Of a stretch of DNA of 64,000 nucleotides, positions 9,678 to 34,852 are shown in pieces (the stretch's first letter is position 1; every line of letters starts with the position of its first letter). The DNA is taken from positions 124,001-188,000 of the IMG/VR virus record IMGVR_UViG_3300043409_000928. One strand, given 5' to 3'. The notes beneath the pieces were generated by a model. That model saw only the letters and a program-made list of their open reading frames with translations, was not told the DNA's origin and searched no databases. The position numbers and the translations under genes are program-made.

Positions 9678-9705
9678 CGATAAAACCCAGCTTTATTGAT
9701 ATTGG

Positions 9706-9711
9706 TAAATA
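9706..9711 (+). promoter_or_regulatory. Late promoter motif TAAATA, 5 nt before ATG 9717
   Basis: ggTAAATAggcttATG. Confidence 0.65.
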
Positions 9712-9716
9712 GGCTT

Positions 9717-10097
9717 ATGCCAATATTCACATCAAAATTTAGGGGTTATAGCTCAGTTGGGACTAGTTTTCTTAGTCCAACTCGATATGACATGGACCTA
9801 GCAAAACAAGACTTAATGAATCATTTTAACACTCGTAAGGGCGAGCGTGTGATGATGCCTGAGTTTGGTAGTATAATTTGGGATCTGTTATTTGAACCGT
9901 TGGATGATCAAACTAAAAAATTAATTGATGAAGATGTTCGTCAAGTTATCAAAAATGACCCACGCTGGCAACTAATTTCAGTAACAATATCTGAAGCACC
10001 CAATGCACTTAACCTTGAAGTTATAATGACATATTTGCCAGCAGATGAGACAGTACAATTACCCCTGATCTATAACAAAGGAACTAATACAGTATGA
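9717..10097 (+). CDS. 25: Baseplate wedge gp25-like
   Basis: TRKGERVMMPEFGS..WDLLFEP; start moved to ATG 9717. Confidence 0.9.
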   Translation: MPIFTSKFRGYSSVGTSFLSPTRYDMDLAKQDLMNHFNTRKGERVMMPEFGSIIWDLLFEPLDDQTKKLIDEDVRQVIKNDPRWQLISVTISEAPNALNLEVIMTYLPADETVQLPLIYNKGTNTV

Positions 10098-13000: not shown

Positions 13001-13273
13001 CGCTCGCGTGTCATTCAATCAATCAATGATTACTTTAGTGTTGACAACTGGGATTTTGGAGAATCATTCTTCTTCACCGATATGGCATCCTGGGTGCATA
13101 CACAGTTAAATGGTATGATTACAAGCATTGCATTAATACCTCGACAAAACGGTCTAACACCAAACGACATGTTTCAAATTCGTTGCGAAGACGATGAGCT
13201 TTTAATTAGTAGCGCCACAGTAAGTGATGTCGAAGTTATTAACAGCACTATGTCTATTACAACAAGCGTTTAA
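10094..13273 (+). CDS. 6: Baseplate wedge gp6-like
   Basis: DFDSLR...DFNDF...LETA...ARQLGYKP; FGDG; TASDY motifs. Confidence 0.88.
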   Translation: MSQSRRLGQLNAAESWLNNYRYLTNANFKAYDFDSLRAALLLHIQTNYPEDFNDFINSSEYVGLIDLMAFIGQNLAFRSDLNLRETFLETAEVRGNVLSIARQLGYKPFRNGGASGFLRLKAINTTQNIYDSKGNNLAGQTIVWGDPLNYDFSEQFITIINQVLNKSNPVGRPISSIVDNGTIRQLYQVDQLENRTMVETLGLPSRNNTTYPCEIIPVNIDVDTQLSIESEPNPYGYLSMLFNNDGTGYANTGNGWFFMFKQGSLKFEDYVITDLVENRVIDIQTDNINETDIWVQSIDGDGRILSTWTPVPSTVGKNIIFNGVDKDNRNLYEVITRENDSVSIKFGDGTFSNIPTGNIRVWFRQSANESVIFSPLDVAGTQIALRYLDSTGASQDLICTLELTDISASTPTETLSQIKNRASRTAASQERMITASDYNVYPEGKVGGIDKIKAVNRTHAGQSLFTDFQDPTGTYRPVISLADDAFIYSTEIIQQYTVNGDMGKEEVFSWMENLLLERGIHQLYYRKYQTVMPIDIVYWMNTDSANSASHGYFTLDDGTGLPLRIGKGNPDLLYRTIKKNTLIKTIDGKWSKILDVYREGFGLTDNTGTNTGLRANGQGAIFLNTIIDADAPLRVTEWFPSLRSIFAPTEKIEILRELESFRSFGLRYDQTFDRWRIIRADNIDTSNNFSLTRAGDNTNQSLDASWLIRMDYDTLTGIWNATTRKDQTVLGSVNQLAFYNQRFGKGIDQSARKIITDHIKILKINEDITEELELDIADYFKLDDGRYDSNRVILWMPGMAHGLVPNDPYIINKLLGTRTLMLERLPYLDAVGQYTLKPVAGETTNTKVGPLSGRQGIKIQYNHVPLRDTRVNATTTNIMDMFVLTSEYNATFRTWVAGGARTRQEPLALDSYSLGVLMADIIPYKSVSDTIIFHPVKYKIIFGPTSTLRNQVKIRVTKTDGTKISDAEIRSRVIQSINDYFSVDNWDFGESFFFTDMASWVHTQLNGMITSIALIPRQNGLTPNDMFQIRCEDDELLISSATVSDVEVINSTMSITTSV

Positions 13274-13281
13274 GGTAACAA

Positions 13282-16200
13282 ATGGCTAAGAATCCTAAAA
13301 AATTAAATCCAATTGATCCATTGATTAAAACATGGCCAGGCCAATCGTTAAACACGGGAGTTGTTCCTGCCACAACTGATCTACTTCCTGGCATTTTTAG
13401 AACTGACACCAATAAGAAAGTTATTAGTGCAATCATGGAAGACTTATTTCAACCTGCGTCTTTAGAAACACTAAACTTTTTAGTTGGAAGAAATACATCC
13501 AGAAGCAAAGACAATAACTTTTTACCACATCCAACTGCCCGTCGCCAATTAGAAGCTGGTCTTGTTGTATTCACCAATGATGGTGTTGAGACTTTAAGTG
13601 CTGACGATGTTGCTAGAGGTTGGGAATTTAACAACAGAGAAAATGAATTACCTGTTCCATTGGGAGTATTAAATTTACCTATTGATCCAGATAAATTTGT
13701 GAACTGGTCTGATTATTATTGGATTGAAGAAGGCATGCCTTCTGTTAACGTAACAGGCGGCACCCAAGAACAATACTACGACATCAGTAGAGACATTGTT
13801 GGCAGCAGATATTATACACTTCCTATACAGCGCAACGGCCGCGCACTAGAATTAAAAAATGGCATGCGTTTGATTTTCCAACAGCATCCATTCCAAACAG
13901 GTATTGCCGCAGACGAACGCATTGCCTATGTTTCAACTGGTGCAATGGCTGACTCATTGCATTTTGAATTACTAGGATACGATAAACAACTTATTAGCAT
14001 TAGTGTCACTACTGACAGTATTGACGAAGTTACAAACTTACCAATCAGGAAAACCATCCAGCAAGTACAAGGCACGGACTATAGTATCTATGGCAATGAA
14101 ATACAATGGATTGTTAGACCAACAGTAGGCGACAATATCCATGTATTTCTATTAGATTACTATCTGACCAGAGATGACTACAAGCAAATGCGTGTCTGGC
14201 AAGTAGAAGGCGTTGGATCAGAAAAAGGTATTCGATTATTAGGCCGCTCTCACCAAATAACAAATACTGTTTATAGTAAAATAACACAAGGCCTTTGGGA
14301 TCAAACTGCAATACCATGGGACCGCATTGAATGGGATGGCAACATCTTGGGTATCAATGCAAAACATTATGTACTACAAAAAGTAGGTGCAGAAAATAGA
14401 AACGCACACAGCCGAGTTAATGTATGGTATCACAAGGATACCATACAGACTTTAGCAACCTTCTTAGACATCCCGTTTAATGACATTGCTAAGCCATCCA
14501 GCAAGGGTCTTCGCCCAATCTTGGAATTTGATCACAGACTGGAATTATGGAATCATGGAAAGACATATCGTCCATGGGTCAACAGTGTTGAGTCTAGTAA
14601 GTCGTCTCCAAACACGTATGTGGGAATGCCTTTAAAAGAATTTAGCATTGAACAAAAGATTGCAAATGAAGATACACTTGACTATCAATTGAATACCGCT
14701 CCACGAATCTTATGGTTAACAACAAATAGTACTGTTGTTAACAAAATTATCAATTTTATTTCAGAAGACGGTGTTATTACTGGCTATTTTGTCGAGACTG
14801 CAAATGCAGATGATGCAGTGGTTGTGGCTAATCCTTTTTATGTCAGCGGCCTTTCGTACACTGAATACTATTGGTTACCAACTGGCGAAGCAAGATTGGC
14901 CAACTACAGAAAAACTAGAACCACTCATCCTCTGTTTGAATTATACAGTAGAGATGGTATAAAATTAAGTGATCCTGCCAGCACTACTACAGGAACTCGA
15001 CCAGGAGTTGTTAACAGTACAATTATACAATTAGCATCAAATGGAGATACAGTAGATAACGAATCAGGTTATAAATTGAAATTTTTAACTAGTCAATTCA
15101 ATCAACTAAGCGAAGGCAACATTGCTAAAAATGCAATGTATGATATCTCATATGAATTTACTCAACAGGTTTATGCTGTATATTTTGAAGCGGGTGCGGC
15201 CAAGACCGTGCCAGGCCCGTATTCGTATAGAATTATACAAGGTAAGCCGCTTGAATACGAACTTAGTAACGGTTGGAAAAGGGCATGGTTTAGATTAAAG
15301 TCATGGGCAATTCGACGCATTGATATAACAGGCGATACTGTTATCCCACTTGATACCACAATGTGGCCAACATATAACTGGGGAATTTCTCCAATTGCCG
15401 GAGAAGCAAAATTTATTCATCTGGACGACTTTAAACCGGTGGTTGAAAATTGTGCAGTTGTTGCTCGCGGCGAGTTGGCCATATTTGATATGTACTTCCC
15501 GCTGGTCTCGTCTGTAATTGTTAACTTTGGCTCGGCTGAAATTGAACTCGATGTAGTCAACGGCAAACTCGAATTTGTAGTGCCATCAACAGCTAGCGAT
15601 ATATGTACAATCAGCTGGCTCAATAATAAATTAACTTTCAGAGTAATTGAAACCTATCAAGATCCGAGAAATGTAAAAGTCAAATTGAACGGCCTTCCAG
15701 CAGAGTATGAGTTTAATGTAGTAAGAGCAGGCACTGACATATTATCTGTGTCGCTGGTTATGACCGGCACAGGCACAATAGATATAATGCATCAGGGCAA
15801 CAGAGTAGAAACTGATATTTTAACAGCCATTCCAGGATTTGATCTTAATGCAGACCAGCTGACGGGTTTTGGCAATGTTGCATTGTCTACTTCTTCACTT
15901 TCTGTTGGTCGACTAGTTGGTGGGCTACAAGCAGAAATTGAAGCAACCAAAAGAAAAGGTCAGTCATGGATTGATTGTATGGCAGTTGGAGCAATGAGTG
16001 GCATATTGATGGCACAACACAGTTCTATCCGTGCCGCCTGGGCTACTTTTAAATTAAACCCGTCGTTGGACAAATTACTAATTGCAAGATCAATGGCATC
16101 ATGGCGCTGGTATCGTCGATTTATCAACAAGCTAGAAGAAAGTTTAACAATTTTAGATTTAGACAACACAACTACTGCATCTGCGCTAGATAGGATACTA

Positions 16201-19200
16201 GAAGAATTACTACTGGGAACCAATTACAGTTCAACTGATGCAGTCACTGGCATGGCATTTACTACCAACGGAATGCTACCAACGGAATATAATGTTACTG
16301 TGTTGCAGTCACGCTTTGCACTGGCATCACTGCTAGAGACTGGTATAAATGGAAACGACCATGTATATTTTTACTTGAATGGCCAACTATTAAAGAACAG
16401 AGTTGATTACACATTTGATACTGTATCAAATGAAGTAGTTTTAAAACTGCCTGCATCCGTTGGAAGCACAGTTACAATATTTCAGGCCAATGAAGCAGAT
16501 GTGTTTACCGCTATTCCAGCAAGCCCTGCCAAGTTAGGTCTTTCTGGAGTATACGAGCCTAAGATTGTTGTTGAAGCATGGGGAGATGAAACTAGAACAT
16601 TAATACAAAGACACGATGGTTCTAGGATAACAGCATATACACCGCCAGATGAATCAACAGTTGAAAATTATATTCTTAATAAGATTATTCTTGAATTTGA
16701 AACACGGGTATTCAATGGTATTATAAAAACAGTAGGCGACATTGGCGTACAACTTCAAGTCAACAATTTTAACAATAAAGATCCGTTAGAAGCACTGGCA
16801 AGGGCACAACTTGAATGGTATTCTACTAACAGTATTAATTTTAGAGATCGTTCAGATTTTAAACTGACAGATCCATGGACATGGAACTATAGTGGATACA
16901 GTTGGAGAGGCATGTACATTAACTATTTTGGAACATACAATCTAAATACAGCACCGTGGGAATCGCTAGGTTATAGTATTATGCCAGCATGGTGGGATAG
17001 TCATTATTCGTGGACTGACGCAGGCAAGCGAGCTAGCTTAGAATTTGCATTGCAAAATGGTATTACAAGCAGTCCTGCAGATGCATTAACAATTAACCCT
17101 GCGTTTGTTCGCAATGTTGATTCTTTCCCAGTTGGCACAGATGGAAAGTTATTGGATCCAGTAATCTGGGGAATTGATGCACCAACAGCAGACGAAGCCG
17201 AACAGCCTTGGGAAATTGGTTCTTGGGGAACTGCTGAAACAGCATGGAGAAGAAGCATTGCCGGAGCATGGGCCGGTGTGCTATATGCTGTCAATGACTA
17301 CGCATACCTGAGCGAGTTTTTTGACAGCTCAGTTGATCCGTTCTCTATGCAATTGCAATTTGATAATGATAGTGTTAAACCTAAAAGCTTTAATTCTATG
17401 AGTCCAAGTCAATTCTTTCAAGACCGCCCAACAGTTGGCATAGGTGCAGTGATATTTGAAGCTTATAGAGAATTTAATTTAATTGGCGAAACTCCACTAA
17501 TTGATCTGATGTCAATTAACATTCGTGTCGGATTTGGCATAGGTGGATTTAGCGACAATGATTTCACATTAAAAATGCCATTTGCTAAATTTCAAATTGG
17601 TAGTTATGTACCGGACGAAGATGTATTAATGACTCTAAGCGAAGGCGTAGCATTGCCAGCATTACGATACACTGCGGTTCGCATTGAAAAAGACAATGAA
17701 GGTTTCAGAGTCTATGGATTTGATCCAGGCCAACGCTACTTTACTATTTTTCAGCCATCTACTCGTAGTAGCACTGGCAATTTTCCAAGTACACGACAAC
17801 AACTGGTAACAAGCTATGGTACTTTTATAGAATACTTAGAATGGGACCAAGCTGGGACTGTGGTACCGTATGGACAGCTTGTTTCAAACAAACAGGACCT
17901 GTTGACATTCTTACTGGGCCTAGGGGAATTTCAAGCCAGCAAGGGACTGATGCTGGATCAAATTAACGATCGAGGAACAGTTACCACATGGAAGCAGGCT
18001 GCAATTGACGCATTTGCATGGATTGAAGAAAATTGGGGTGACCGTCACTACTGTGTGGTTGGTGTTGCAACCAATGATGGTTTAAAGTTTTATCACGAAA
18101 GAGGTATGCTAGACAGGCTTGACAGTGAAGTAGGACAAAGCGGTAAAATTTTATTCAACTCGGGCAGATCGGCTCTTGCAAATGAAATTCTAATCACACG
18201 CGAGTATGAGCCTAATGTGGATAAAATTTCTCCGGCAAGCGATGAACAAATTGTGTTTGCTGATATTAGATTGCGCGAATATGAACATGTAGTTTATATC
18301 AATAGAAGAACTAAGTTCAGCGATACCATTGTTGACTTCTTAACAGGAGCAAGACTTGATAGTTTAAAATTCTCTGGTCGTAGGTCATACGCTTGGACAG
18401 GCCGCCCCAACGCCCGAGGCCTAATTCCAAATGAAACCGGAATTGTGCCCAGTTTTGATGCAATAGTATCTGACATCATTGAAAGTCATAAACCTGAATC
18501 AAGCGCATTTGATGGGTTCAAGAGTCGTGTGTCGCGAGCAAACTCAGTGCCGTCTAAGGACACAGTTGTATTTGATATTATACAAGATCCCAATGCGGCA
18601 TTTTTATATAGACAAGGTTTACAAACAGCATCTGGTACCAACTTGGCAATTGATGCATTATTTAGAAATGTAAATTTTGATATTCCAGGTCGTCTACAAG
18701 ATGTAAGTGTTAACGAACAGTGGATGTTTGATACAGGCAACTATGGTCGCCTTGGTGAACAAAAAATTTGGGAAATTGAATTACGCAAAGAAGATTTTAC
18801 TGGCAATAGACAAATTATTCGATTTAAAGAAGTTAATACAGCAGTAGACTTGCAAGGCGACAATATTATTGATATCATTGGCGTAAATGATCCGCGCTGG
18901 GTTACACGGCCAACCAACTCGGTTGACTTCAGAACCATCTCTCGTAATAACATAACGCTCGAGTATAGCAAACAAAACGGATGGTTACCAAGTGCTGGTA
19001 TTGCCGAGTTAACAGATACCAATATACAAATAGTCACTTTAGATGACCTAAACTATAGTGATTTGCTAGGACTAACAGACATTGCAAATAATGTAACCAA
19101 TACATTAACTACAGGTAAACTATTTGCAATCAGGTCATTCAGCAAATACGGTGATTATGAAGTTGGCGACTATACATGGTATACTGGTATTTTATATCAA

Positions 19201-21888
19201 TCAATTGAAAAATATCGTGGCTCTGTTACAGGAGCATTTGATTCCACAATGTGGGAAAGTGTCCCAGTAACTGGCAATTTGCTTCCATCTGCATGGATCA
19301 GTGATTACAATGGCAACGGCTGGAATGTATTACAAGTGCTTGCCCCTATGTACGTTGAAGAAGTTTGTCCCAATGCACTAGAGCAGTCGTTAAACGAAAG
19401 CAAGGCTACATTTGCTAGCCCACACGGACTGATTGTTGGAGAAAAAATCATCTTAGGCGGAAGCGGAGACGGGGCATATGATAGTGTACATGTAGTAAAA
19501 GAAGTAGTTGACGATTATAACATTTTAATTCCAGCCAGAAGTACCAGTGGCGAAATTGTTTACGATATGGTAGCCTATCGCTTGGTTGAAGTTAAATTTA
19601 ATTCTGAAGCAGAATGGCAACAATCTGGTATTAATTTTTCAGCCGGAATGAAAGCGTATATTGACTATGGTGATACAGAAGGTACATGGAAAATTGTATC
19701 TTATGTGGCTGATGGTACAAGCACTCCTGCCATTGTAACAGAGTACAGCGGGCCAATGGTGGCCAGCGGAGATATTACAACAGTACAGCTTACTGATTAT
19801 TATACACAAACTGTAGTTTCTGACGTAGAAGTATTTGATCCTTATAAAGGATTAACAATTGACCAAGTGGCTATACATTTAGATTATAAAGGAATTGTAG
19901 ATCCTGCAACTTATAATGTAACAGACTTGGGAACAACAGATGAATATGCAGTTGAAAGCTGGGGTGCAGATGAAGTTGGTAAACTGTGGTGGGACTTGAC
20001 TAAACTTCGTTACATTGAATACGAACAAACAGATGATATACAATATCGTGCAAGCCATTGGGGAGAGAAGTTTGCAAATACAAAGGCTGTGGTATATGAA
20101 TGGACAGGCACTGACAGCCTGCCTAATACCACAGATTACCCATTTGCCAGATTGGATACAAGTAGTGGACCACAAGGCCAAATTCGTTACAGTGAAAACG
20201 ACGAAACTGATTTTGACACTAGTGGAACAACTACACGCTACTATTTCTGGAATGGCAATGTTGACACAGTACCAGTAGGAATAGACCGGCCGGCCGCAAA
20301 TGCAATTGAATCAATCTTAAATGATCCAGATGCAAACGGTGTAGCTTGGATGTCGCCAATTGATACTAATGCATTTGTTATTTCAAATATCAATGACTTC
20401 TTCAATAACACTGACCGACTTGTATTAAGAATAGAACAAAATACAAATGTTGATCAAATTTACAACTTTAGTAAAATTGTTACTGAAGGATTTGCTGGCG
20501 ATGTAATTGACGACTATTTTTATAATCGATTAGAATCATCAGTTGCTGGGCGAGACAACTACAGAGAGTTGTACATCATCAAGCCATATGTGGGCGGCCA
20601 GTCTTATACCAAAGGCGACTACATTGTTAACTTTAACAATGGATATTTTAAAGCAGTGACAACACCAGGTGCGTACGGCACTAACGAGTTTCCATTGCTG
20701 ACAGGAATATCAGATCGCAGAGAAGATATCAAACGAGTATGGACAGCAAAGCCCGGGCTCGACCATAAAATTTTTATAGCGGCAAAAAACTTTGTGGCCA
20801 ATGGAACTGTTGCAGTTGATCGCGCCAGCAGAGTTATGGTGCGTAGTGCGGCAACAGCACTGATTACAAATATTTTAGAATCATTGTCACCAGAGTATTA
20901 TGCTGTGGTAAACAATCGACGAGCAGTACCAAGTAAGAAACTGCATCCGTTACGCAGATATGGCAATAAGTATTTTCCATATCCACAAAGTTGGTTTAGT
21001 AATTTGACCAATGCTCGACGAACTCTTGTTGTTGCGGCAAATGATTCTTTATTAAAGATTGATACAGTTAGTAAGGCCAATTGGGACTTCTATCTAAGAA
21101 CATACCGACCATTGTACGGAACGTACTCAAGAGACCTTAGTAAATTTTGGAAATATGTTGACTATGCAGTTGATGGATATATTCCAGGCAGCGAAGCCAA
21201 CCGGTTGACTTCATTTATACAAGTCCAAGACTTGGATAGTACAGCAACTAATTTTGCAATTGTTGACAATGCTAACAATACCATCGAAGCATACAATCGT
21301 GATGGCACAACCATTGAATTGGTATACAGAAAAAATGGTACCATACAGTTCTTGGACACAGTATGGAACGGAAGTTTAGGTGATGCATGGGACAGGAGTA
21401 GATGGGATAGAACTCCGTGGGATGACGATGGCAGTGAAATTATTGAAAGTATTTTACGAGCTCTGCGACTCAACATCTTCACAGCAACAGATGAAGGATA
21501 CTTCAATCTGCTATTCTTTGCAATGATAAAAGAAAGCCTGGTTCAAATTCCGTTTGCCAATTGGGTAAGCAAAACTACCTACCTGGATGTGGCACAAACC
21601 AGTTCAAATTCGTTGCTTAAAGTTGGCACATTCTTCAACAAGAATGACTCTACGATCAAGAAGTATTTGAATGAGGTTAAACCTTACCACAGTAAAATTG
21701 TTGACACCAATCAATACAGCAAGTCTTCATTTGCATTTGATGTTAAATTAGACGAAATCATTGCGTTAAACATTACAACTGTAACGCTTATTACAACAGA
21801 AGGTGAAGATATACTTCAAACTGAATCAAATCAGGGCATTGCTTACAAGTTTGATACTGTAACGCAGAGCCTTACAGAAGAAGGATAA
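13282..21888 (+). CDS. Very large virion structural protein (2868 aa), baseplate/tail associated
   Basis: Uninterrupted ORF after gp6; C-terminal YLNEVKPYHSKI; Trp/Asp motifs. Confidence 0.65.
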   Translation: MAKNPKKLNPIDPLIKTWPGQSLNTGVVPATTDLLPGIFRTDTNKKVISAIMEDLFQPASLETLNFLVGRNTSRSKDNNFLPHPTARRQLEAGLVVFTNDGVETLSADDVARGWEFNNRENELPVPLGVLNLPIDPDKFVNWSDYYWIEEGMPSVNVTGGTQEQYYDISRDIVGSRYYTLPIQRNGRALELKNGMRLIFQQHPFQTGIAADERIAYVSTGAMADSLHFELLGYDKQLISISVTTDSIDEVTNLPIRKTIQQVQGTDYSIYGNEIQWIVRPTVGDNIHVFLLDYYLTRDDYKQMRVWQVEGVGSEKGIRLLGRSHQITNTVYSKITQGLWDQTAIPWDRIEWDGNILGINAKHYVLQKVGAENRNAHSRVNVWYHKDTIQTLATFLDIPFNDIAKPSSKGLRPILEFDHRLELWNHGKTYRPWVNSVESSKSSPNTYVGMPLKEFSIEQKIANEDTLDYQLNTAPRILWLTTNSTVVNKIINFISEDGVITGYFVETANADDAVVVANPFYVSGLSYTEYYWLPTGEARLANYRKTRTTHPLFELYSRDGIKLSDPASTTTGTRPGVVNSTIIQLASNGDTVDNESGYKLKFLTSQFNQLSEGNIAKNAMYDISYEFTQQVYAVYFEAGAAKTVPGPYSYRIIQGKPLEYELSNGWKRAWFRLKSWAIRRIDITGDTVIPLDTTMWPTYNWGISPIAGEAKFIHLDDFKPVVENCAVVARGELAIFDMYFPLVSSVIVNFGSAEIELDVVNGKLEFVVPSTASDICTISWLNNKLTFRVIETYQDPRNVKVKLNGLPAEYEFNVVRAGTDILSVSLVMTGTGTIDIMHQGNRVETDILTAIPGFDLNADQLTGFGNVALSTSSLSVGRLVGGLQAEIEATKRKGQSWIDCMAVGAMSGILMAQHSSIRAAWATFKLNPSLDKLLIARSMASWRWYRRFINKLEESLTILDLDNTTTASALDRILEELLLGTNYSSTDAVTGMAFTTNGMLPTEYNVTVLQSRFALASLLETGINGNDHVYFYLNGQLLKNRVDYTFDTVSNEVVLKLPASVGSTVTIFQANEADVFTAIPASPAKLGLSGVYEPKIVVEAWGDETRTLIQRHDGSRITAYTPPDESTVENYILNKIILEFETRVFNGIIKTVGDIGVQLQVNNFNNKDPLEALARAQLEWYSTNSINFRDRSDFKLTDPWTWNYSGYSWRGMYINYFGTYNLNTAPWESLGYSIMPAWWDSHYSWTDAGKRASLEFALQNGITSSPADALTINPAFVRNVDSFPVGTDGKLLDPVIWGIDAPTADEAEQPWEIGSWGTAETAWRRSIAGAWAGVLYAVNDYAYLSEFFDSSVDPFSMQLQFDNDSVKPKSFNSMSPSQFFQDRPTVGIGAVIFEAYREFNLIGETPLIDLMSINIRVGFGIGGFSDNDFTLKMPFAKFQIGSYVPDEDVLMTLSEGVALPALRYTAVRIEKDNEGFRVYGFDPGQRYFTIFQPSTRSSTGNFPSTRQQLVTSYGTFIEYLEWDQAGTVVPYGQLVSNKQDLLTFLLGLGEFQASKGLMLDQINDRGTVTTWKQAAIDAFAWIEENWGDRHYCVVGVATNDGLKFYHERGMLDRLDSEVGQSGKILFNSGRSALANEILITREYEPNVDKISPASDEQIVFADIRLREYEHVVYINRRTKFSDTIVDFLTGARLDSLKFSGRRSYAWTGRPNARGLIPNETGIVPSFDAIVSDIIESHKPESSAFDGFKSRVSRANSVPSKDTVVFDIIQDPNAAFLYRQGLQTASGTNLAIDALFRNVNFDIPGRLQDVSVNEQWMFDTGNYGRLGEQKIWEIELRKEDFTGNRQIIRFKEVNTAVDLQGDNIIDIIGVNDPRWVTRPTNSVDFRTISRNNITLEYSKQNGWLPSAGIAELTDTNIQIVTLDDLNYSDLLGLTDIANNVTNTLTTGKLFAIRSFSKYGDYEVGDYTWYTGILYQSIEKYRGSVTGAFDSTMWESVPVTGNLLPSAWISDYNGNGWNVLQVLAPMYVEEVCPNALEQSLNESKATFASPHGLIVGEKIILGGSGDGAYDSVHVVKEVVDDYNILIPARSTSGEIVYDMVAYRLVEVKFNSEAEWQQSGINFSAGMKAYIDYGDTEGTWKIVSYVADGTSTPAIVTEYSGPMVASGDITTVQLTDYYTQTVVSDVEVFDPYKGLTIDQVAIHLDYKGIVDPATYNVTDLGTTDEYAVESWGADEVGKLWWDLTKLRYIEYEQTDDIQYRASHWGEKFANTKAVVYEWTGTDSLPNTTDYPFARLDTSSGPQGQIRYSENDETDFDTSGTTTRYYFWNGNVDTVPVGIDRPAANAIESILNDPDANGVAWMSPIDTNAFVISNINDFFNNTDRLVLRIEQNTNVDQIYNFSKIVTEGFAGDVIDDYFYNRLESSVAGRDNYRELYIIKPYVGGQSYTKGDYIVNFNNGYFKAVTTPGAYGTNEFPLLTGISDRREDIKRVWTAKPGLDHKIFIAAKNFVANGTVAVDRASRVMVRSAATALITNILESLSPEYYAVVNNRRAVPSKKLHPLRRYGNKYFPYPQSWFSNLTNARRTLVVAANDSLLKIDTVSKANWDFYLRTYRPLYGTYSRDLSKFWKYVDYAVDGYIPGSEANRLTSFIQVQDLDSTATNFAIVDNANNTIEAYNRDGTTIELVYRKNGTIQFLDTVWNGSLGDAWDRSRWDRTPWDDDGSEIIESILRALRLNIFTATDEGYFNLLFFAMIKESLVQIPFANWVSKTTYLDVAQTSSNSLLKVGTFFNKNDSTIKKYLNEVKPYHSKIVDTNQYSKSSFAFDVKLDEIIALNITTVTLITTEGEDILQTESNQGIAYKFDTVTQSLTEEG

Positions 21889-21909
21889 AGTGGGTTATTT
21901 CAAGTAAAC

Positions 21910-21915
21910 TAAATA
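21910..21915 (+). promoter_or_regulatory. Late promoter motif TAAATA, 5 nt before ATG 21921
   Basis: cTAAATAtgcttATG. Confidence 0.65.
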
Positions 21916-21920
21916 TGCTT

Positions 21921-22547
21921 ATGAACAAGATTCAATTACCAGTCAGTATCGAAACATTTATTGTCATCAAAGATGCCGATACCGGAGAAATATTGCGTGA
22001 AGGCTCCAATGCCATTCACCAGGAAAACATGAGCACCGCCATTGCAACGGGACTGTCCCGTGGTAATAATCACTTTATCAGTGAAATACACTTTGGCATT
22101 GGTGCAAGTATTACAGGCATTGACGGAGTAATTACATACCGCAAGCCCAATGTAACTGGCATTGACGCCAACTTACACAAAGCAACATATTTTAGGGTAG
22201 TCGACGACGAAGACCTAAACAATCCAGACGCAGAAGCAAACAATGTGACTGTGACACATACAACAGGCACAACCTATGCAGATACTATTGTGACCGCAAC
22301 AATTGATTATAGTGATCCGTTGGTAAACGACAGCACATATAACATTGTTAACGGTACACAACAAAGCTTAGATGCCACAACCAGTGTTGACGGTGAGGTT
22401 GTGTTTGATGAAATTGGATTAAAAACCAAAGGGACAACTGGGGTCAATACAGGTAATTTGCTCACGCATTTTATATTCCACCCAGTTGAAAAGCAAATTA
22501 ATCAGCGTATACAAATTATATACACACTGAGAGTGCAGACCGGTTAA
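21921..22547 (+). CDS. Putative virion structural protein
   Basis: Structural operon context; FDEIGL...LLTHFIFHPVEK..N..I.I.YTLR C-terminus; start reassigned to 21921. Confidence 0.55.
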   Translation: MNKIQLPVSIETFIVIKDADTGEILREGSNAIHQENMSTAIATGLSRGNNHFISEIHFGIGASITGIDGVITYRKPNVTGIDANLHKATYFRVVDDEDLNNPDAEANNVTVTHTTGTTYADTIVTATIDYSDPLVNDSTYNIVNGTQQSLDATTSVDGEVVFDEIGLKTKGTTGVNTGNLLTHFIFHPVEKQINQRIQIIYTLRVQTG

Positions 22548-22560
22548 AACGGGTATCCGC

Positions 22561-22566
22561 TAAATA
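22561..22566 (+). promoter_or_regulatory. Late promoter motif TAAATA upstream of fibre gene
   Basis: Intergenic TAAATA followed by a 33-nt leader. Confidence 0.5.
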
Positions 22567-22599
22567 TACAAAGGCAATAAGCCAAAAGGACATGAGAAA

Positions 22600-23667
22600 A
22601 TGGCATACGAAGTAAACAAAAGCAACGGTGATATATTAGTTAACTTGATTGATGGTGAAGTTGACAATACTACTACGCCCTTAAATTTACTAGGTAAAAA
22701 CTACCTGGGATATGGCGAACTAATCGCTGAAAACTTTGTTCACATGCTTGAAAATTTTTCAAGCAGTTCAGAGCCTGTGAGCCCTATTACCGGTCAGCTA
22801 TGGTTCAACACCGGTGAGAACAGATTGGCAGTACAAGATACTGATGAACATTGGAAAACGCTGGCCCATTTGGTGAGTCGTCAGAATAGACCAACTGATA
22901 CTGCTCGCTTAGGCGACTTTTGGTGGGATACAACAAACAAAGCATTGAAGATTTATGTTGGAACAACAAGTGCAGATCAAGTACTTCCGGGCTACAATTC
23001 TGGTTGGGTAAATGCCAGTGCGTTCCAAGGCAACAGCGGTATCAGCTTTGCAGACTTACTAGATACAAACGGAACCACACACAGGGTAGTTCGTTTTAAT
23101 GTAAATGGAATCTGCGTTGTAATTCTTAGCACTGATGCAGAGTTCACAATTGCACAGTCACATGCTGTTAATGGATTTCTTAGAATTGGTAAAGGTATTA
23201 ACATGAATACCACAGGCAACGACACACAGGCATTTAATCCAAATGCGTTTAAGTTGCGCGGTATTAGTATGGAAGCTGAATTTGCTGACGTGGCTGAAAT
23301 TTATGTTGGCGATGCTACATATGAGCCAGGTACATTGGTAAGCTTGGGTGGAGTAGCAGAAGTAACACAAACAGTTGGTGTAGCAGATCAAAATATCTTT
23401 GGTATTGTTTCTACTAGACCAGCTTACTTGATGAATGCACGACAAAAGCACGAAATAAATGCAATGCCAATTGCTGTTGCAGGACGAATCCCAGTCAAGG
23501 TCACTGGCATCGTAAACAAAGGCGACAGATTAGTTGCAAGCGATATCCCTGGAGTAGCACAATCTGCCACAGTTGATGTTCCAGCCTGGAGCATTATTGG
23601 TCGTAGCTTACAAAATTTCAGCGGAGAAGGCGTCGGTAAAGTCGAAGCTACAGTTGGAGTTAGGTAA
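22600..23667 (+). CDS. Tail fibre/baseplate appendage protein with C-terminal chaperone-like domain
   Basis: N-terminal LLGKNYLGYGE..AENF..MLENF; C-terminal ADVAEIY...YEPGTLV...GRIPVKV.G...GD.LV. Confidence 0.6.
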   Translation: MAYEVNKSNGDILVNLIDGEVDNTTTPLNLLGKNYLGYGELIAENFVHMLENFSSSSEPVSPITGQLWFNTGENRLAVQDTDEHWKTLAHLVSRQNRPTDTARLGDFWWDTTNKALKIYVGTTSADQVLPGYNSGWVNASAFQGNSGISFADLLDTNGTTHRVVRFNVNGICVVILSTDAEFTIAQSHAVNGFLRIGKGINMNTTGNDTQAFNPNAFKLRGISMEAEFADVAEIYVGDATYEPGTLVSLGGVAEVTQTVGVADQNIFGIVSTRPAYLMNARQKHEINAMPIAVAGRIPVKVTGIVNKGDRLVASDIPGVAQSATVDVPAWSIIGRSLQNFSGEGVGKVEATVGVR

Positions 23668-23672
23668 GCACA

Positions 23673-26600
23673 ATGTCTACCAAACGCTATATTGTTGCTG
23701 TCAATAAAGATGTAGTCGATCTGAATCTATTTTGGAATCAGGTTGAGTCTGCCACTGCTGGCATTGCAAACATTCCTGACCGCCCAGTTGCAATAGCAAA
23801 CAATCGAAGTGCGTTTACACGAATTTGCGAATATGAGTTAACTGAAGCTGAAGCTGAACAGTTACGCAATGATCCTAGGGTGTATTCGGTTGGGCGACCT
23901 TATGAAGATTTACCTTGGATTACAATAGCACCAAACTCTATTACTCAATCTGATAATTTTACAAAACCGGCCAATGGTAACAGTAGTAACAGCTTTGTAA
24001 ATTGGGGAATGCCTCGACACAGTAGTACTAGCAATGTTTATGCAACTAATTCAAATCCACCATACATTTATGATCTAGATGGAACTGGTGTTGATGTTAT
24101 TATTTCAGACTCTGGCATACAAGCAGACCATCCTGAATTTACAGATGCTAATGGCAACACCAGAGTCTACAATCCAAATTGGGATAACATTGCTAGTCAA
24201 ATTGGTGCATCTGCTACAAGTGGATGGGATACAGCAAGTTATATCTATGGTAACACATCAAGTGTTGCAGGCCACGGTACCCATGTAGCTGGTACAGTAG
24301 CAGGAAAAACATACGGTTGGGCAAAGAATTCAAGAATACTATCATTAAGATCAACTGGGGAATTACCAGGTGACATAGCTGATGTATTTTCTATGATAAA
24401 ACATTGGCATCAAAATAAGGGCAGTAATAGACCAACCGTAGTTAATATGAGCTGGGGTACATCAATTAGTGCTAATGATCTGGGACTAACAGATCCAAGT
24501 CAAACTTCGTTGGTAAAACAGATCATTGATTCTGTAACATATCGAGGTACCACATATACTACAAATGGTTCAATTGAATCAGATAACTTCTATCAGTCTA
24601 AGGGGCTACTAGTAGGTTCTGACAATTTTGCATGGGCATCTTTGCTTAATGGTTTACCAATCCATGATACAACATATGACACTTTTATTAGTGAAATGCT
24701 AAGTGCTGGAATAGTCCTGACACATTCAGCTGGTAATAGTAGCTATAAAATTGATATACCCACTGGGCTAGATTATAATAATAATTTTTTAATAAACATT
24801 GATGCTATTTTTCCAGGATATGGAACACTTACAGTTTATTATAATCGAGGTAGCAATCCATCAGTTCCTATTACTGTAGGTAGCTTAGATAGTGTTACAT
24901 CTGGATTAACTGATCAAGCCGCAACATATTCAATGAAAGGCCCAGGCGTCGATATATGGGCCGCTGGTACTAATATTATGAGTGCCTGGGCAAACAATGA
25001 TGGTAGTAGCGTAGCGTATTTTAAAAATTCTAGCTTTAAACAAAAAAACAATACAGGTACTAGTATGGCTAGTCCTAATATTGCTGGTATAGCCGCATTG
25101 TACCTGCAACAAAATCCAACAGCAACACCTGCACAAGTTAAAGCGGCTTTATTGGCTAACGCCACCAACACAATTTTAAACACTGGAACCACAACTGATT
25201 ATACCAATGGCAGATCATTGCTAGGCAGTAGTCCTAAGGTTGCCTATATTAATACAGTAACAACTACACCACCACCAACAACCTACACATTAACTGTAAT
25301 CAAGACTGGCTCTGGCGACGGAACAATAACAAGTTTACCAGCAGGTATTACAGGTCCAGGTACAGCAACATTTGCCGCAGGCACAGTTGTTACCTTAACC
25401 GGAGCACCACAAGCAAATAGTTCTTTTGCTGGGTGGTCTGGAGCCGCAACAGGTACTGCTCCTGCAAGCATTGCAATGAATGCTAACAAAACAGTTACAG
25501 CAACATTCAATGCAATCAATGTTCCTTCTTATACAATTACAACAGCACCTACGCAACTCAGTGAAGGCGCTACAGCACCATTTGTTGTTACAACAACCAA
25601 TGTTCCAAACAATGCAACATTGTATTGGAGAATTGTCAACGGTGCCAGCAACTTTACGCAAGCAAGTGGTTCATTTACTATCGCTTCCAACAGCGGAACA
25701 TTTACAGTAACGCCTAATACAAATACCATAGTTGATGGCAATAGAACATTCGTTGTTGAAATTAAAACAGTTTCAACCAACGGGGTAACAGTTGCTACCA
25801 GCAATCCCGTTACCATTGTGGATATGAACTCATACCCAGTGGCCGGAACAGAACTATCAACATTCTGCAGAGACTATGATCAATGGGCAATGATTGCAGA
25901 TGGCGCAGGTGGGCAAACTGAACAACTTAAACAAGCAGACAGCACAAACTGCGGATATGATCCAACATGGCCAGCCAAGGACTCTATCATAAGTGAAGGC
26001 TGTGTCCCAGGTACATATACCTATAGAGTTACTCGAGCAAACGGATACAATGGAACATACAACGAAAACGAAATCAACAGTATCCGTTGTGGTTACCAGG
26101 CAACTGGCACACCAATGGGCGAACCTTATTGCCTGGGTCTTGATCGATACCAGGACTATGCAGACGGTTATGGTGGAAGATACAACCTGGTAATTGAAAG
26201 GAATAGCACACTATGCGGATATGTACCACGAATAAGACCAGCCGAAACAAAACCACAACCAGAAAAGAAGATAACAGAGCACTGGTACAATACACTAACA
26301 ACAGAAGTGAATGAGTTGTTTGGGGATATACATGCTGGCAAAGGACCTAGTGCGGATGTGACTGTGCAAGAAAGTGCAATCAAATGGGGCTGGGGCGGAG
26401 AGAATGTTGCCCAAGTTGGAGTCTCTGAAAAGATAACAGCGGTTCATACCAATAAACTTGTAAATCGTGTTAACTTGAGTACATTAAGAACTGGCAGTAG
26501 TGATCAAGAATTGGTCATTGTTTCTAAAGGTGGCAGGCTAACTGATGAGTTTTTCAAAACTGTAACAGATTTACTAGATACTGCCAGGGAAATAAAGAAC

Positions 26601-27389
26601 ACTGTTGAACCAAGTATGACCGAATTAAGCGTACTTGGATCATACAACAGCACTGAAAATTGGACCAACATTTTACAAACAGAAGTTCAATTGGACTTTG
26701 GCACTTACGAAGATGCTCGACATTTCTTTAACGCAGGCGGTGATATCAGACTTAGTTTTAGCACACAAGATGGTTACGGTCCAGGTTACCATAATTGGCG
26801 CTGTATCTTTTTTGATCAAGGAACATTAAAATTAAATGTTGATAGTCTACTCAGCTTGAACTCCCGTGGTATTACACAGGATAAAGGCTTTGCCCAGATC
26901 ATTGAAGAAGAACAATTGCTATACACTAGTCCTAGTGCCAGCGGTGGTAGTGGAGGCTATGGAGGCTATGGAGGCTATGGCGGCTATGGAGGCTATGGAG
27001 GCTATGGCGGATATGGAGGCTATGGAGGCTATGATAATTGCCACACTGGCGGATATGGAGGCTATGGAGGCTATGGAGGCTATGGAGGCTATGGAGGCTA
27101 CGGCCACCAGCATCATGACCACAGCGGATATGGCGGCTATGGCGGATATGGCGGATATGGAGGCTACGGTGGTTACGCATCCAGCCGCTTAAAAGTATAT
27201 GGTTCAATTGTCAACGATAAACTAATTTTAAGAGTAATCCTTGATAATTCTGGACTTGGAGTAAGAATTCGAGGCATAATGAAAATGGCAGTTTCTGTGA
27301 CTCATCCTTCAACTGTGACCGAAAACAATGTCACATTAACATTGCCAGTTCCTACTATAGAACTGACACAAGGCTGGACTGAAATCTAA
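23673..27389 (+). CDS. Subtilisin (S8) serine protease fused to Ig-like/repeat domains and a virion-type C-terminal domain
   Basis: Triad DVIISDSGI, GHGTHVAG, GTSMASP; oxyanion SAGN; InlB-B-like repeat YTLTVIKTGSGDGTI...FAGWSGA. Confidence 0.88.
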   Translation: MSTKRYIVAVNKDVVDLNLFWNQVESATAGIANIPDRPVAIANNRSAFTRICEYELTEAEAEQLRNDPRVYSVGRPYEDLPWITIAPNSITQSDNFTKPANGNSSNSFVNWGMPRHSSTSNVYATNSNPPYIYDLDGTGVDVIISDSGIQADHPEFTDANGNTRVYNPNWDNIASQIGASATSGWDTASYIYGNTSSVAGHGTHVAGTVAGKTYGWAKNSRILSLRSTGELPGDIADVFSMIKHWHQNKGSNRPTVVNMSWGTSISANDLGLTDPSQTSLVKQIIDSVTYRGTTYTTNGSIESDNFYQSKGLLVGSDNFAWASLLNGLPIHDTTYDTFISEMLSAGIVLTHSAGNSSYKIDIPTGLDYNNNFLINIDAIFPGYGTLTVYYNRGSNPSVPITVGSLDSVTSGLTDQAATYSMKGPGVDIWAAGTNIMSAWANNDGSSVAYFKNSSFKQKNNTGTSMASPNIAGIAALYLQQNPTATPAQVKAALLANATNTILNTGTTTDYTNGRSLLGSSPKVAYINTVTTTPPPTTYTLTVIKTGSGDGTITSLPAGITGPGTATFAAGTVVTLTGAPQANSSFAGWSGAATGTAPASIAMNANKTVTATFNAINVPSYTITTAPTQLSEGATAPFVVTTTNVPNNATLYWRIVNGASNFTQASGSFTIASNSGTFTVTPNTNTIVDGNRTFVVEIKTVSTNGVTVATSNPVTIVDMNSYPVAGTELSTFCRDYDQWAMIADGAGGQTEQLKQADSTNCGYDPTWPAKDSIISEGCVPGTYTYRVTRANGYNGTYNENEINSIRCGYQATGTPMGEPYCLGLDRYQDYADGYGGRYNLVIERNSTLCGYVPRIRPAETKPQPEKKITEHWYNTLTTEVNELFGDIHAGKGPSADVTVQESAIKWGWGGENVAQVGVSEKITAVHTNKLVNRVNLSTLRTGSSDQELVIVSKGGRLTDEFFKTVTDLLDTAREIKNTVEPSMTELSVLGSYNSTENWTNILQTEVQLDFGTYEDARHFFNAGGDIRLSFSTQDGYGPGYHNWRCIFFDQGTLKLNVDSLLSLNSRGITQDKGFAQIIEEEQLLYTSPSASGGSGGYGGYGGYGGYGGYGGYGGYGGYGGYDNCHTGGYGGYGGYGGYGGYGGYGHQHHDHSGYGGYGGYGGYGGYGGYASSRLKVYGSIVNDKLILRVILDNSGLGVRIRGIMKMAVSVTHPSTVTENNVTLTLPVPTIELTQGWTEI
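25833..26222 (+). repeat. Three 42-46 aa Cys-containing protein repeats ending in CGY
   Basis: C...A(D/N)G.(G/N)G.......S..CGY three times. Confidence 0.8.
26952..27176 (+). repeat. 9-bp tandem repeat (GGAGGCTAT and variants) encoding GGY x20 in blocks of 9, 6 and 5
   Basis: Directly visible; spacers DNCHT and GHQHHDHSGY. Confidence 0.97.
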
Positions 27390-27416
27390 TTGGACATTCC
27401 ACATTATATACGCTGA

Positions 27417-27422
27417 TAAATA
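27417..27422 (+). promoter_or_regulatory. Late promoter motif TAAATA heading the glycosyltransferase operon
   Basis: gaTAAATAac in the 27390-27447 gap. Confidence 0.55.
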
Positions 27423-27447
27423 ACAACGTATATAATATTGGAATTAA

Positions 27448-27792
27448 ATGGACAGTAAAATCACAGATGCACTTGCATTTGCCAATTATAGATTAACCCT
27501 ACAAGTACAGCGCCAAAATATTGAAGCGCGAGTCCAAACGGCCCTATTGTTGTCTTATCAAAGTGCAATTTTTAAAACTACACAAGAACTAATTTCTTTT
27601 GTTGATACAAAATTGCGACTTGGTGGCAACCTTTTTGTTCAAGACCAAACCAATAATGTAATTTCCATTCTTAATCCAGCTGAATTTTTAAGCTGTTTAA
27701 TTACAACATATGATTCAGCAATGGAAATGAAGCAAACCGAGCAACATAAATTAAAGTCAGCAAGAAGCACAGCTAAAATTGTAGGACTCTAA
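27448..27792 (+). CDS. Hypothetical protein, possibly fibre assembly chaperone
   Basis: Follows the fibre/protease genes; helical. Confidence 0.4.
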   Translation: MDSKITDALAFANYRLTLQVQRQNIEARVQTALLLSYQSAIFKTTQELISFVDTKLRLGGNLFVQDQTNNVISILNPAEFLSCLITTYDSAMEMKQTEQHKLKSARSTAKIVGL

Positions 27793-27793
27793 A

Positions 27794-31314: not shown

Positions 31315-31317
31315 AGT

Positions 31318-34837: not shown

Positions 34838-34841
34838 TGTA

Positions 34842-34847: not shown

Positions 34848-34852
34848 TAGAC

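What the first reader, a model, noticed from the sequence alone, without database searches (positions are those of the whole stretch)
23673..27389. Intact subtilisin protease at the N-terminus of a probable virion protein
Seen: propeptide-like N-terminus, full Asp/His/Ser triad and oxyanion Asn, then InlB-B-like and Ig-like spacers, Cys repeats and a structural-type C-terminal domain, at the end of the late operon. No signal peptide is visible. The protease part looks more AT-rich than its flanks (visual impression only). Inference: a virion-displayed protease that could cut S-layer, biofilm or other surface proteins, or mature fibres.
Basis: partly seen in the sequence, partly recalled or inferred. 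Interest (0 to 1): 0.6.

Follow-up and report, generated by a model that had tools for sequence, protein, structure and literature searches.

The report
Swappable protease head on phage baseplate protein
A giant uncultured lake phage has put an intact subtilisin-type protease on the front of a small conserved protein encoded next to its baseplate genes, and a near-identical phage carries an unrelated protease in exactly the same place, so the protease looks like an exchangeable tool, probably for cutting host surface proteins.

Summary
The ORF at 23673-27389 (+) is real and encodes 1238 aa. Residues 1-89 look like an I9-type propeptide. Residues 90-530 are a proteinase-K-type S8 domain with D146/H201/N355/S464 intact. 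An InlB-B repeat, an Ig-like module and three two-Cys repeats follow. Residues 867-1238 are a conserved domain with an 84-aa Gly/Tyr loop.

That C-terminal domain is a stand-alone 300-400 aa protein in the same gene slot in most relatives. The slot lies just after gp25, gp6, the giant gp7-like gene and two small conserved genes. The protease is therefore an add-on.

The closest relative (88-94% nt identity in the flanks) has a kumamolisin-like S53 sedolisin replacing codons 4-533, with sharp breakpoints. S8 and S53 heads recur on this anchor in other lineages, and S8 fusions arose at least three times.

A distant S8-headed cyanophage protein (S-SCSM1 ORF228) carries a virion-protein note in GenBank; the paper found 45 virion proteins by mass spectrometry.

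Corrections: the ORF is not at the operon end, and the AT-richness is weak (38.5% vs 41.5% GC).

Best reading: a virion-borne, baseplate-proximal protease cassette acting on host surface proteins. Virion location, activity and substrate are all untested.

The parts
23673..27389 (+). Whole ORF, 1238 aa (P0001): protease head, stalk and anchor
23673..23939 (+). I9-like propeptide plus linker (residues 1-89). The model is low-confidence at residues 86-88, where the mature domain begins.
   Evidence: AF2 topology; mature proteinase-K-type enzymes align from about residue 90; sub-threshold I9 and prodomain matches
23940..25262 (+). S8 (proteinase-K-type) catalytic domain, residues 90-530. D146 = 24108-24110, H201 = 24273-24275, oxyanion N355 = 24735-24737, S464 = 25062-25064. 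About 165 residues of family-specific insertions.
23682..25271 (+). Exchangeable head cassette (codons 4-533). It has no nucleotide similarity to the closest relative L009, which carries an S53 sedolisin head here (L009:10010-11122).
25296..25517 (+). InlB B-repeat (Flg_new_2), residues 542-615. Its start (PPTTYTLTV) is the right-hand breakpoint of the cassette.
25530..25838 (+). Ig-like beta module, residues about 620-722. The same module occurs in P0039-P0042 and at the C-terminus of P0010.
   Evidence: sequence support is weak
25851..26228 (+). Three repeats of about 40 aa with two Cys each (C732/C760, C777/C806, C820/C848). Motif: C..ADG.GG..NS.CGY. No Pfam match.
26271..27386 (+). Conserved anchor domain, residues 867-1238: a helical part followed by a beta-sandwich. 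It is a stand-alone protein in the same slot in most relatives.
26934..27185 (+). Gly/Tyr-rich loop of 84 aa (44 G, 21 Y, 5 H) inside the beta-sandwich. Made of 9-bp DNA repeats, disordered in the model, and expanded compared with about 10-30 aa in relatives.
   Evidence: the Logan contig breaks here
21915..23667 (+). Two conserved genes between the gp7-like gene and the slot (210 aa and 355 aa). They are homologues of Atu_ph07 gp177 and gp176. The 355-aa protein matches virion-structural and tail-fibre PHROGs.
7500..21888 (+). Baseplate block upstream: gp5-like hub (7500-9677), gp25 (9696-10097), gp6-like wedge (10094-13273) and a giant gp7-like protein of 2868 aa (13282-21888).

Best explanation
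The gene encodes a baseplate-proximal virion accessory protein built in three parts.

(1) Anchor. The C-terminal 372 aa is a conserved protein of this uncultured jumbo-myovirus clade, a helical part followed by a beta-sandwich with a Gly/Tyr loop. I infer that it attaches the protein to the tail or baseplate.

(2) Stalk. An InlB-B repeat, an Ig-like module and three Cys repeats form the middle.

(3) Head. The N-terminus is a proteinase-K-type S8 zymogen. It probably clips its own I9-like propeptide near residue 89 and stays tethered through its C-terminus.

The head is an exchangeable cassette. Recombination between the conserved upstream gene end plus the first three codons and the start of the InlB-B repeat replaces it with another protease family (S53) or removes it.

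Inferred function: a virion-carried protein depolymerase that cuts proteinaceous host surface structures (S-layer, pili, giant adhesins or envelope proteins) so that the baseplate can reach its receptor. The head type would contribute to host range.

Shown: architecture, intact catalytic residues, fold, synteny, cassette swap, recurrence of the fusion.
Inferred: virion location, autoprocessing, activity, substrate.
For: Intact enzyme:
- S8 domain with an invariant triad and oxyanion Asn.
- Confident model, Z 35.7 to proteinase-K-type enzymes, with a propeptide-like N-terminus.

Location and anchor:
- The gene lies three genes after gp6 in the baseplate block. That block, through the 355-aa gene just upstream, is shared with Atu_ph07.
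- The anchor stands alone in the same slot in L004-L008.
- The anchor has an N-terminal extension of 26 aa or less in 66 of 86 loci.

Cassette behaviour:
- L009 is fully syntenic, with 88-94% nt identity in the flanks. Its head is kumamolisin-like (E 8e-49) with the Glu/Asp/Ser residues and the oxyanion Asp conserved.
- The breakpoints are sharp, at codon 3/4 and at PPTTYTLTV.
- Further S8 heads: L013, L015, L022, L051, P0041, P0042. A further S53 head: L024. Other cargo: P0040, P0043, L016 with BP74_N, L010, L071.
- A tree of heads needs at least 3 gains or losses of fusion.

Indirect support for virion location:
- The distant S8-headed S-SCSM1 ORF228 carries a virion-protein note in GenBank, from a study that identified virion proteins by mass spectrometry.
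- Cyanophage homologues sit among tail-fibre and baseplate genes.

Other:
- There is no signal peptide, so the protein can only leave the cell with the virion or at lysis.
- The fusion is seen in independent assemblies and in other lakes.
Against: - There is no direct evidence that this protein or the anchor family is in virions.
- The anchor has no match in 50,697 cultured-phage records.
- The anchor has no confident PDB fold match: Foldseek E > 0.2, best VIA Z 6.4.
- The anchor has no PHROG annotation.
- Conserved anchors of tail fibres and spikes are usually N-terminal, whereas this one is C-terminal.
- The genome has a second, stand-alone S8 paralogue, and relatives with a bare anchor also carry stand-alone S8 genes. 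The protease family may therefore have a general phage-internal role.
- The S53 head lacks a prodomain. Sedolisins are typically acid-active (established knowledge), which is odd for lake water.
- The host and the substrate are unknown.
Confidence: 0.55

Rival explanations
1. Morphogenetic protease. The head processes the phage's own tail, fibre or baseplate proteins (for example the giant gp7-like protein or fibres) during assembly, and does not act on the host.
For:
- S8 genes are widespread as stand-alone genes in these phages and lie next to structural genes.
- The own-genome paralogue sits beside a gene that matches tail-spike PHROGs.
Against: - A dedicated maturation enzyme should co-evolve with its substrates. 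Here a different protease family replaces it while neighbouring structural genes stay 88-98% identical.
- Most relatives have no head on the anchor at all.
- A long stalk of extracellular-type modules is not needed for an assembly enzyme.
Confidence: 0.15
2. Not a virion component. The protease is released at lysis and acts as a soluble or matrix-bound enzyme (digesting biofilm or debris, helping lysis, or degrading envelope proteins from within). The C-terminal domain would be a binding module, not a virion anchor.
For: - There is no direct virion evidence.
- The closest stand-alone homologues (67-69% identity) sit next to a weak GH19-like gene in other phage contigs.
- The anchor family has no annotated structural relatives.
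Against: - The slot is fixed immediately after the conserved baseplate block, in a co-oriented late gene string.
- The distant S8-headed S-SCSM1 ORF228 carries a virion-protein note.
- In more distant relatives the anchor's first half opens proteins of 800-2000 aa, as attachment domains of fibres do. Those long proteins are themselves unannotated.
Confidence: 0.12
3. A binding module rather than an enzyme. The subtilase fold, with its propeptide permanently bound, serves as an adhesin or receptor-binding domain. PCSK9 and the CspA/CspC pseudoproteases work this way.
For: - PCSK9 and Csp proteins are among the structural matches.
- Propeptide retention is known in those families (established knowledge).
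Against: - All four catalytic residues are invariant across 72 homologues.
- The alternative S53 head also keeps its catalytic residues.
- Pseudoproteases typically lose catalytic residues.
Confidence: 0.08
4. Assembly chimera or mis-called fusion of two adjacent genes.
For: - The window is a metagenome-derived IMG/VR record.
- The Gly/Tyr repeat breaks contigs.
Against: - One Logan contig covers 22400-27083 with no differences.
- Contigs from another lake bridge 23681 and 25272.
- L099 reproduces the 5' junction.
- The same architecture occurs in at least 6 other contigs.
- There is no stop codon in the frame.
Confidence: 0.02

Closest known systems
Subtilisin-like proteins of T4-like cyanomyoviruses (S-H38 QPB07966, P-SSM2 PSSM2_297, S-SCSM1 ORF228/gp144; PHROG 9158)
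   Same: - Same phage-specific S8 subfamily, 26-34% identity over residues 1-490, including the propeptide-like N-terminus and the insertions.
- Encoded among baseplate and tail-fibre genes.
- S-SCSM1 ORF228 is also an N-terminal S8 head on a long protein, and it carries a virion-protein note.
   Different: - Those proteins are mostly stand-alone at about 550-610 aa.
- S-SCSM1 fuses the head to LamG-type domains, not to this anchor.
- None has the InlB-B, Ig-like and Cys-repeat stalk or the Gly/Tyr anchor.
- No S8 to S53 allelic exchange has been described.
- The present phage is not a cyanophage: it has no psbA, and its baseplate is closest to Atu_ph07 and SCTP-2.
Proteinase-K subfamily of subtilases (ProteinT 8c4z, Meiothermus keratinase 5wsl, aqualysin I 4dzt, proteinase K)
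   Same: - Same fold: Z 33-36, rmsd about 2 A, 30-36% identity.
- Same D-H-S triad and oxyanion Asn.
- N-terminal I9-type prodomain.
   Different: - No signal peptide.
- About 165 extra residues of insertions.
- Followed by about 700 aa of stalk and anchor.
- Encoded by a phage.
Kumamolisin / sedolisin (S53), the head of the closest relative P0039
   Same: Occupies exactly the same position on the same chassis. The catalytic Glu/Asp/Ser and the oxyanion Asp are conserved.
   Different: - A different peptidase family, with no nucleotide or protein similarity to the S8 head.
- Lacks the roughly 190-aa prodomain of kumamolisin.
Tailspike and tail-fibre depolymerases with horizontally exchanged catalytic modules (for example capsule depolymerases of Klebsiella phages, K1F endosialidase). 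From established knowledge, not tested here.
   Same: The logic is the same: a conserved virion-attachment part, an exchangeable enzymatic part, sharp recombination boundaries, and different enzymes in near-identical genomes.
   Different: - Those enzymes cut polysaccharides, are usually trimeric beta-helices, and have N-terminal anchors.
- Here the enzymes are serine proteases at the N-terminus and the conserved part is C-terminal.
Virion-associated peptidases that cut peptidoglycan (phi29 gp13 M23 domain, T5 Pb2, CHAP-domain tail lysins) and the S74 intramolecular-chaperone peptidase of tail spikes. From established knowledge.
   Same: Peptidase domains carried on tail proteins.
   Different: - Those are peptidoglycan endopeptidases, or self-cleaving C-terminal chaperones.
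- No such Pfam family matched here.
- This head is a broad-type subtilase zymogen.

Membership tests
Peptidase S8 (subtilase), proteinase-K subfamily | Match to the family profile above the curated threshold | tested here: met
   PF00082, 98.2 bits against a 21.8-bit cut-off, residues 137-502
Peptidase S8 (subtilase), proteinase-K subfamily | Catalytic triad in the order Asp-His-Ser, plus the oxyanion Asn | tested here: met
   D146, H201, S464 and N355 sit in the canonical motifs and are invariant in 72 sequences
Peptidase S8 (subtilase), proteinase-K subfamily | Subtilisin alpha/beta fold | tested here: met
   AF2 model with pLDDT 92.1; Z 35.7, rmsd 2.1 A, 274 of 282 residues against 8c4z_B
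Peptidase S8 (subtilase), proteinase-K subfamily | N-terminal I9 propeptide (intramolecular chaperone and inhibitor) | tested here: inconclusive
   The model shows beta-alpha-beta-beta-alpha-beta at residues 4-74. Inhibitor_I9 scores E 0.18 (13 bits against a 21.2-bit cut-off). The prodomain chains of 8c4z and 8c4x are the top hits of a profile search, but only at E about 1.
Peptidase S8 (subtilase), proteinase-K subfamily | Proteolytic activity and autoprocessing | not testable with these tools
   Needs expression and an assay
Virion-associated depolymerase / enzymatic tail protein | Present in the virion | not testable with these tools
   Only indirect: the virion-protein note on the distant S8-headed homologue S-SCSM1 ORF228, from a study that used virion mass spectrometry
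Virion-associated depolymerase / enzymatic tail protein | Encoded in the tail or baseplate module | tested here: met
   The gene order is gp5-like, gp25, gp6, gp7-like, 210 aa, 355 aa, then this gene. The block is shared with Atu_ph07.
Virion-associated depolymerase / enzymatic tail protein | Catalytic module exchanged between close relatives on a conserved attachment part | tested here: met
   S8 against S53 in genomes 88-94% identical, with sharp breakpoints. Other relatives carry bare anchors or other cargo.
Virion-associated depolymerase / enzymatic tail protein | Trimeric beta-helix or fibre architecture | not tested
   No beta-helix appears in either model.
Peptidase S74 intramolecular chaperone of tail spikes | C-terminal self-cleaving S74 domain | tested here: not met
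   No such Pfam match at E <= 0.1. The protease is N-terminal and belongs to family S8.
T4 baseplate and short-fibre proteins gp8-gp12 (for the C-terminal domain) | Sequence or fold similarity to a known baseplate or fibre protein | tested here: not met
   - No Pfam or PHROG match.
- No cultured-phage match.
- Foldseek against the PDB gives E > 0.2, and the best VIA score is Z 6.4, to a generic jelly-roll.
- Only uncharacterised viral clusters match.

The most novel reading that the evidence does not exclude
Tailed phages of this clade use serine proteases as receptor-clearing enzymes, the protein counterpart of capsule depolymerases. The proteases are mounted as interchangeable heads (S8, S53, possibly more) on a conserved baseplate-proximal anchor of an undescribed fold. 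Head exchange at two fixed recombination points would retarget the phage to hosts with different proteinaceous surface layers.
Probability: 0.3. Interest if true: 0.8.

Novelty: new variant of a known kind. Interest (0 to 1): 0.6.

Why it matters
Enzymatic tail proteins studied so far mostly cut sugars. Subtilisin-like genes in marine T4-like phages are annotated but have not been studied functionally, and I found no paper on them in seven full-text searches (one further query was rejected).

This locus gives a natural experiment. The same chassis occurs with no head, with an S8 head and with an S53 head, in genomes that are otherwise almost identical. That argues that proteolysis itself is the selected function, and that the head behaves like a host-range module.

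If confirmed, it would add a protease class to phage depolymerases. It would define a new anchor domain and a natural splice point (the InlB-B repeat) for modular tail proteins. It would also suggest that abundant aquatic jumbo phages contend with proteinaceous cell coats.

Tried and rejected
Searches that found nothing:
- Megablast of the ORF against cultured phages: no match.
- tblastn of the anchor against cultured phages: no match.
- Foldseek (PDB) and VIA-wide on the anchor model: only generic beta-sandwich matches, best Z 6.4 to the CspB jelly-roll. I treat these as uninformative.
- BFVD and the ESM Atlas: only uncharacterised viral proteins.
- Pfam and PHROGs on the Cys repeats, the downstream genes and the long distant anchor-bearing proteins: nothing useful.
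- Anchor HMM against the Atu_ph07 genes after gp7: no hit. Only the two small upstream genes are shared.
- psbA in the genome: absent, so I dropped the idea that this is a cyanophage.
- Literature searches for virion or tail subtilisin or sedolisin in phages: nothing relevant. One query was rejected for a term that was too short.

Partly compromised:
- The profile for the representative search picked up head columns from the long rows of alignment A4. Its hit list therefore mixes S8-only and anchor hits, and I used only the anchor positions.

Rejected idea:
- AT-richness as a sign of recent foreign origin. The head is only 1.35 sd below the genome mean.

Dead end:
- A third junction variant seen as a loose end in run X7 could not be traced by exact-pattern scans.

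- A homotrimer test of the anchor (complex prediction daily limit).
- Foldseek against the PDB for the head model.


Full report
**1. What is in the sequence**

The ORF at 23673-27389 (+) is open and encodes 1238 aa.

- Pfam finds Peptidase_S8 at residues 137-502 (7e-28) and a divergent InlB B-repeat (Flg_new_2) at residues 542-615.
- PHROG 9158 (unknown function) covers residues 3-646 at 1e-66.
- The catalytic residues sit in their canonical motifs: D146 (DSG), H201 (HGTH), N355 (AGN) and S464 (GTSMA). All four are invariant in a 72-sequence alignment of homologues.
- An AlphaFold2 model of residues 1-533 has mean pLDDT 92.1. It superposes on proteinase-K-type subtilases with Z 33-36 and rmsd about 2 A (8c4z_B, 5wsl, 4dzt, proteinase K). 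Their mature N-termini align to about residue 90.
- Residues 4-74 form a beta-alpha-beta-beta-alpha-beta unit, as I9 prodomains do. Sequence support is below threshold but in register: Inhibitor_I9 at E 0.18, and the prodomain chains of 8c4z and 8c4x as the top hits of a profile search at E about 1.
- There is no hydrophobic signal sequence. The chain starts with the first prodomain strand.

After the head come four further elements:

- the InlB-B repeat;
- an Ig-like module, with only a weak Ig_3 hit;
- three repeats of about 40 aa with two cysteines each (C732/C760, C777/C806, C820/C848);
- a 372-aa C-terminal domain.

The model of the C-terminal domain is above pLDDT 90 except for an 84-aa Gly/Tyr loop (44 G, 21 Y, 5 H). 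That loop is encoded by 9-bp DNA repeats.

**2.

- The gene is not at the end of the operon. Tightly packed, co-oriented genes run on to 38611, and no + strand terminator-like site follows the ORF.
- The AT-richness is real but modest. The head is 38.5% GC against a genome mean of 41.5% (8th percentile). GC3 is 0.23 against about 0.31.

**3. Genome and gene context**

- The window is part of a 285-kb IMG/VR virus record, estimated 86% complete.
- It is found in freshwater and lake metagenomes.
- It has no psbA.
- Its gp6-like wedge protein is closest to the jumbo phages Atu_ph07 and SCTP-2 and to Rak2-like phages.
- Upstream lie a gp5-like hub, gp25, gp6 and a 2868-aa gp7-like protein, then genes of 210 aa and 355 aa. 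The last two are homologues of Atu_ph07 gp177 and gp176, which also follow its giant gp7-like gene.
- The ORF is the next gene after that block.
- A second, stand-alone S8 paralogue (516 aa, 37% identity) lies outside the window at G000:C1:244635-246125. Its neighbour matches tail-spike PHROGs.

**4. The C-terminal domain is the conserved part and the protease is an add-on**

- Searched alone, residues 860-1238 find stand-alone proteins of 314-450 aa at E down to 1e-108.
- In L004-L008 these proteins occupy exactly the same slot. The gene order there is a gp7-like gene of about 3000 aa, then genes of 207, 330-370, [319-333], 114-117 and 286-291 aa.
- In a survey of IMG/VR plus those loci, 66 of 86 anchors have an N-terminal extension of 26 aa or less.
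- Among longer proteins that carry the anchor:
  - S8 heads occur in P0041, P0042, L013, L015, L022 and L051;
  - S53 heads occur in P0039 (L009) and L024;
  - other cargo is an InlB-B repeat with an unknown N-terminus (P0040), a BP74_N domain (L016), unknown extensions (L010, L017, L071), and a C-terminal Big_13 plus fn3 extension (P0043).
- All relatives have a short Gly/Tyr loop. The loop is expanded in this protein.

**5. The cassette swap**

- L009 has the same gene order and the same gene sizes as the window.
- blastn identity between the two is 87.9% over 13634-23681, 85.3% over 25272-27004 and 93.9% over 27124-37389. There is no similarity at all over 23682-25271.
- At the left edge, the 60 nt upstream and ATG-TCT-ACC are identical, and then the sequences diverge completely. 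They resume at the codons for PPTTYTLTV, the start of the InlB-B repeat.
- L009's replacement segment encodes a kumamolisin-like sedolisin (1t1g, E 8e-49). Its catalytic Glu, Asp and Ser and its oxyanion Asp are conserved, and it has no prodomain.
- Identity is raised next to the cassette: 94-98% for 750 nt upstream, against 84-89% further away. This fits recent recombination.
- A tree of heads places the fused heads in three separate, well-supported positions among stand-alone enzymes. The fusion state therefore changed at least three times.
- The nearest stand-alone enzymes (67-69% identity, about 578 aa) lie in other phage contigs.
- Relatives with a bare anchor still carry a stand-alone S8 elsewhere in the genome.

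**6. The fusion is not an artefact**

- A Logan contig from run X1 covers 22400-27083 without a difference. X1 may be the source sample, so this is an independent assembly rather than independent data. The contig stops in the Gly/Tyr repeat.
- Contigs from another lake run (X2) bridge both breakpoints.
- Metatranscriptome run X10 has pieces along the ORF, including one across the 5' junction. DNA carry-over cannot be excluded.
- JGI contig L099 reproduces the junction between the upstream gene and the S8 head.

**7. Evidence on virion location**

- None is direct.
- The cyanophage homologues lie among baseplate and tail-fibre genes.
- S-SCSM1 ORF228 (1411 aa) has an intact S8 head followed by LamG-type domains. 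It carries a '(virion protein)' note in GenBank, and the paper reports 45 virion proteins found by mass spectrometry of CsCl-purified particles.
- In more distant relatives the first half of the anchor opens proteins of 800-2000 aa. Attachment domains of fibres behave this way, but those proteins are unannotated.
- The anchor has no confident structural relative and no match in cultured phages.

**8. Interpretation**

The best-supported reading is a baseplate-proximal virion protein. Its conserved C-terminal domain would anchor it, and its N-terminal protease would be held out on a stalk of extracellular-type modules as an exchangeable tool.

Two unrelated protease families alternate on the same chassis, and the neighbouring structural genes barely change. 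Selection therefore appears to act on proteolysis of an external, variable target. That points to host surface proteins rather than a fixed phage substrate.

This is an inference. The rivals, with my confidence in each, are:

- a morphogenetic protease (0.15);
- a lysis-released, non-virion enzyme (0.12);
- a non-catalytic binding module (0.08);
- an assembly artefact (0.02).

**9. Novelty**

- Already known: subtilisin-like genes in T4-like cyanophages are annotated, and one S8-headed protein has been flagged as a virion protein without comment.
- New here: the modular head-stalk-anchor architecture on an undescribed anchor family; the allelic S8 to S53 exchange with defined breakpoints; and the repeated, independent recruitment of protease heads.
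- I rate it a new variant of a known kind (enzymatic tail proteins with exchangeable catalytic modules), with interest 0.6.

**10. Limits**

- I could not test oligomerisation.
- I could not run Foldseek on the head model.
- The host is unknown.

Noticed in passing
G000:C1:244635-246125 (-), outside the window; L003:1441-2991: A second, stand-alone S8 paralogue (516 aa, 37% identity to the head, triad intact). It lies next to a 274-aa gene that matches tail-spike and virion-structural PHROGs. Orthologous stand-alone copies occur in relatives whose anchor is bare.
   Followed up: partly
window 26934-27185: The Gly/Tyr/His-rich loop is 84 aa here against about 10-30 aa in relatives. It is built of 16 + 4 copies of 9-bp units. 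Logan contigs break here, and one run shows a 318-nt skip (27084 to 27403). It may vary in length within populations. Its function is unknown.
   Followed up: partly
window 23661 (run X7): A contig follows the window up to 23661 and then continues with a different ORF start (M-S-T-L-P-E-Y-P...). This matches neither the S8 nor the S53 allele and may be a third head type in the same slot. Exact-pattern scans of two collections found nothing.
   Followed up: partly
window 34286-34837 (+); also L009:19993-20511: An aspartyl/asparaginyl beta-hydroxylase gene is conserved a few genes downstream. In eukaryotes such enzymes modify Cys-rich EGF-like modules, so it might modify the Cys repeats of the stalk. 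This is pure speculation.
   Followed up: no
window 30343-33157 (+): Three adjacent paralogous genes (323, 290 and 326 aa; 23-36% identity to one another) with no Pfam or PHROG match. They are conserved in all syntenic relatives.
   Followed up: partly
window 37044-38611 (+) and 3567-4214 (+): Metabolic genes sit in the same co-oriented string or nearby: a fatty-acid desaturase, ThyX, and a cytidylyltransferase-like gene.
   Followed up: no
window 13282-21888 (+): A giant gp7-like baseplate protein of 2868 aa. It is 2853-3566 aa in relatives and 4449 aa in Atu_ph07.
   Followed up: no
window 22929-23681 and 25272-26021, compared with L009: Nucleotide identity to L009 is higher right next to the swapped cassette (94-98% upstream, 88-94% downstream) than further away (84-89% and 76-79%). 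This mosaic pattern is typical of recent recombination.
   Followed up: yes
L093:6271-6906 and L094:6725-7360: In the contigs that hold the closest stand-alone S8 homologues, the next gene is a 211-aa protein with a weak GH19 (lysozyme/chitinase-type) match. This hints that some stand-alone copies sit beside envelope-degrading enzymes.
   Followed up: no
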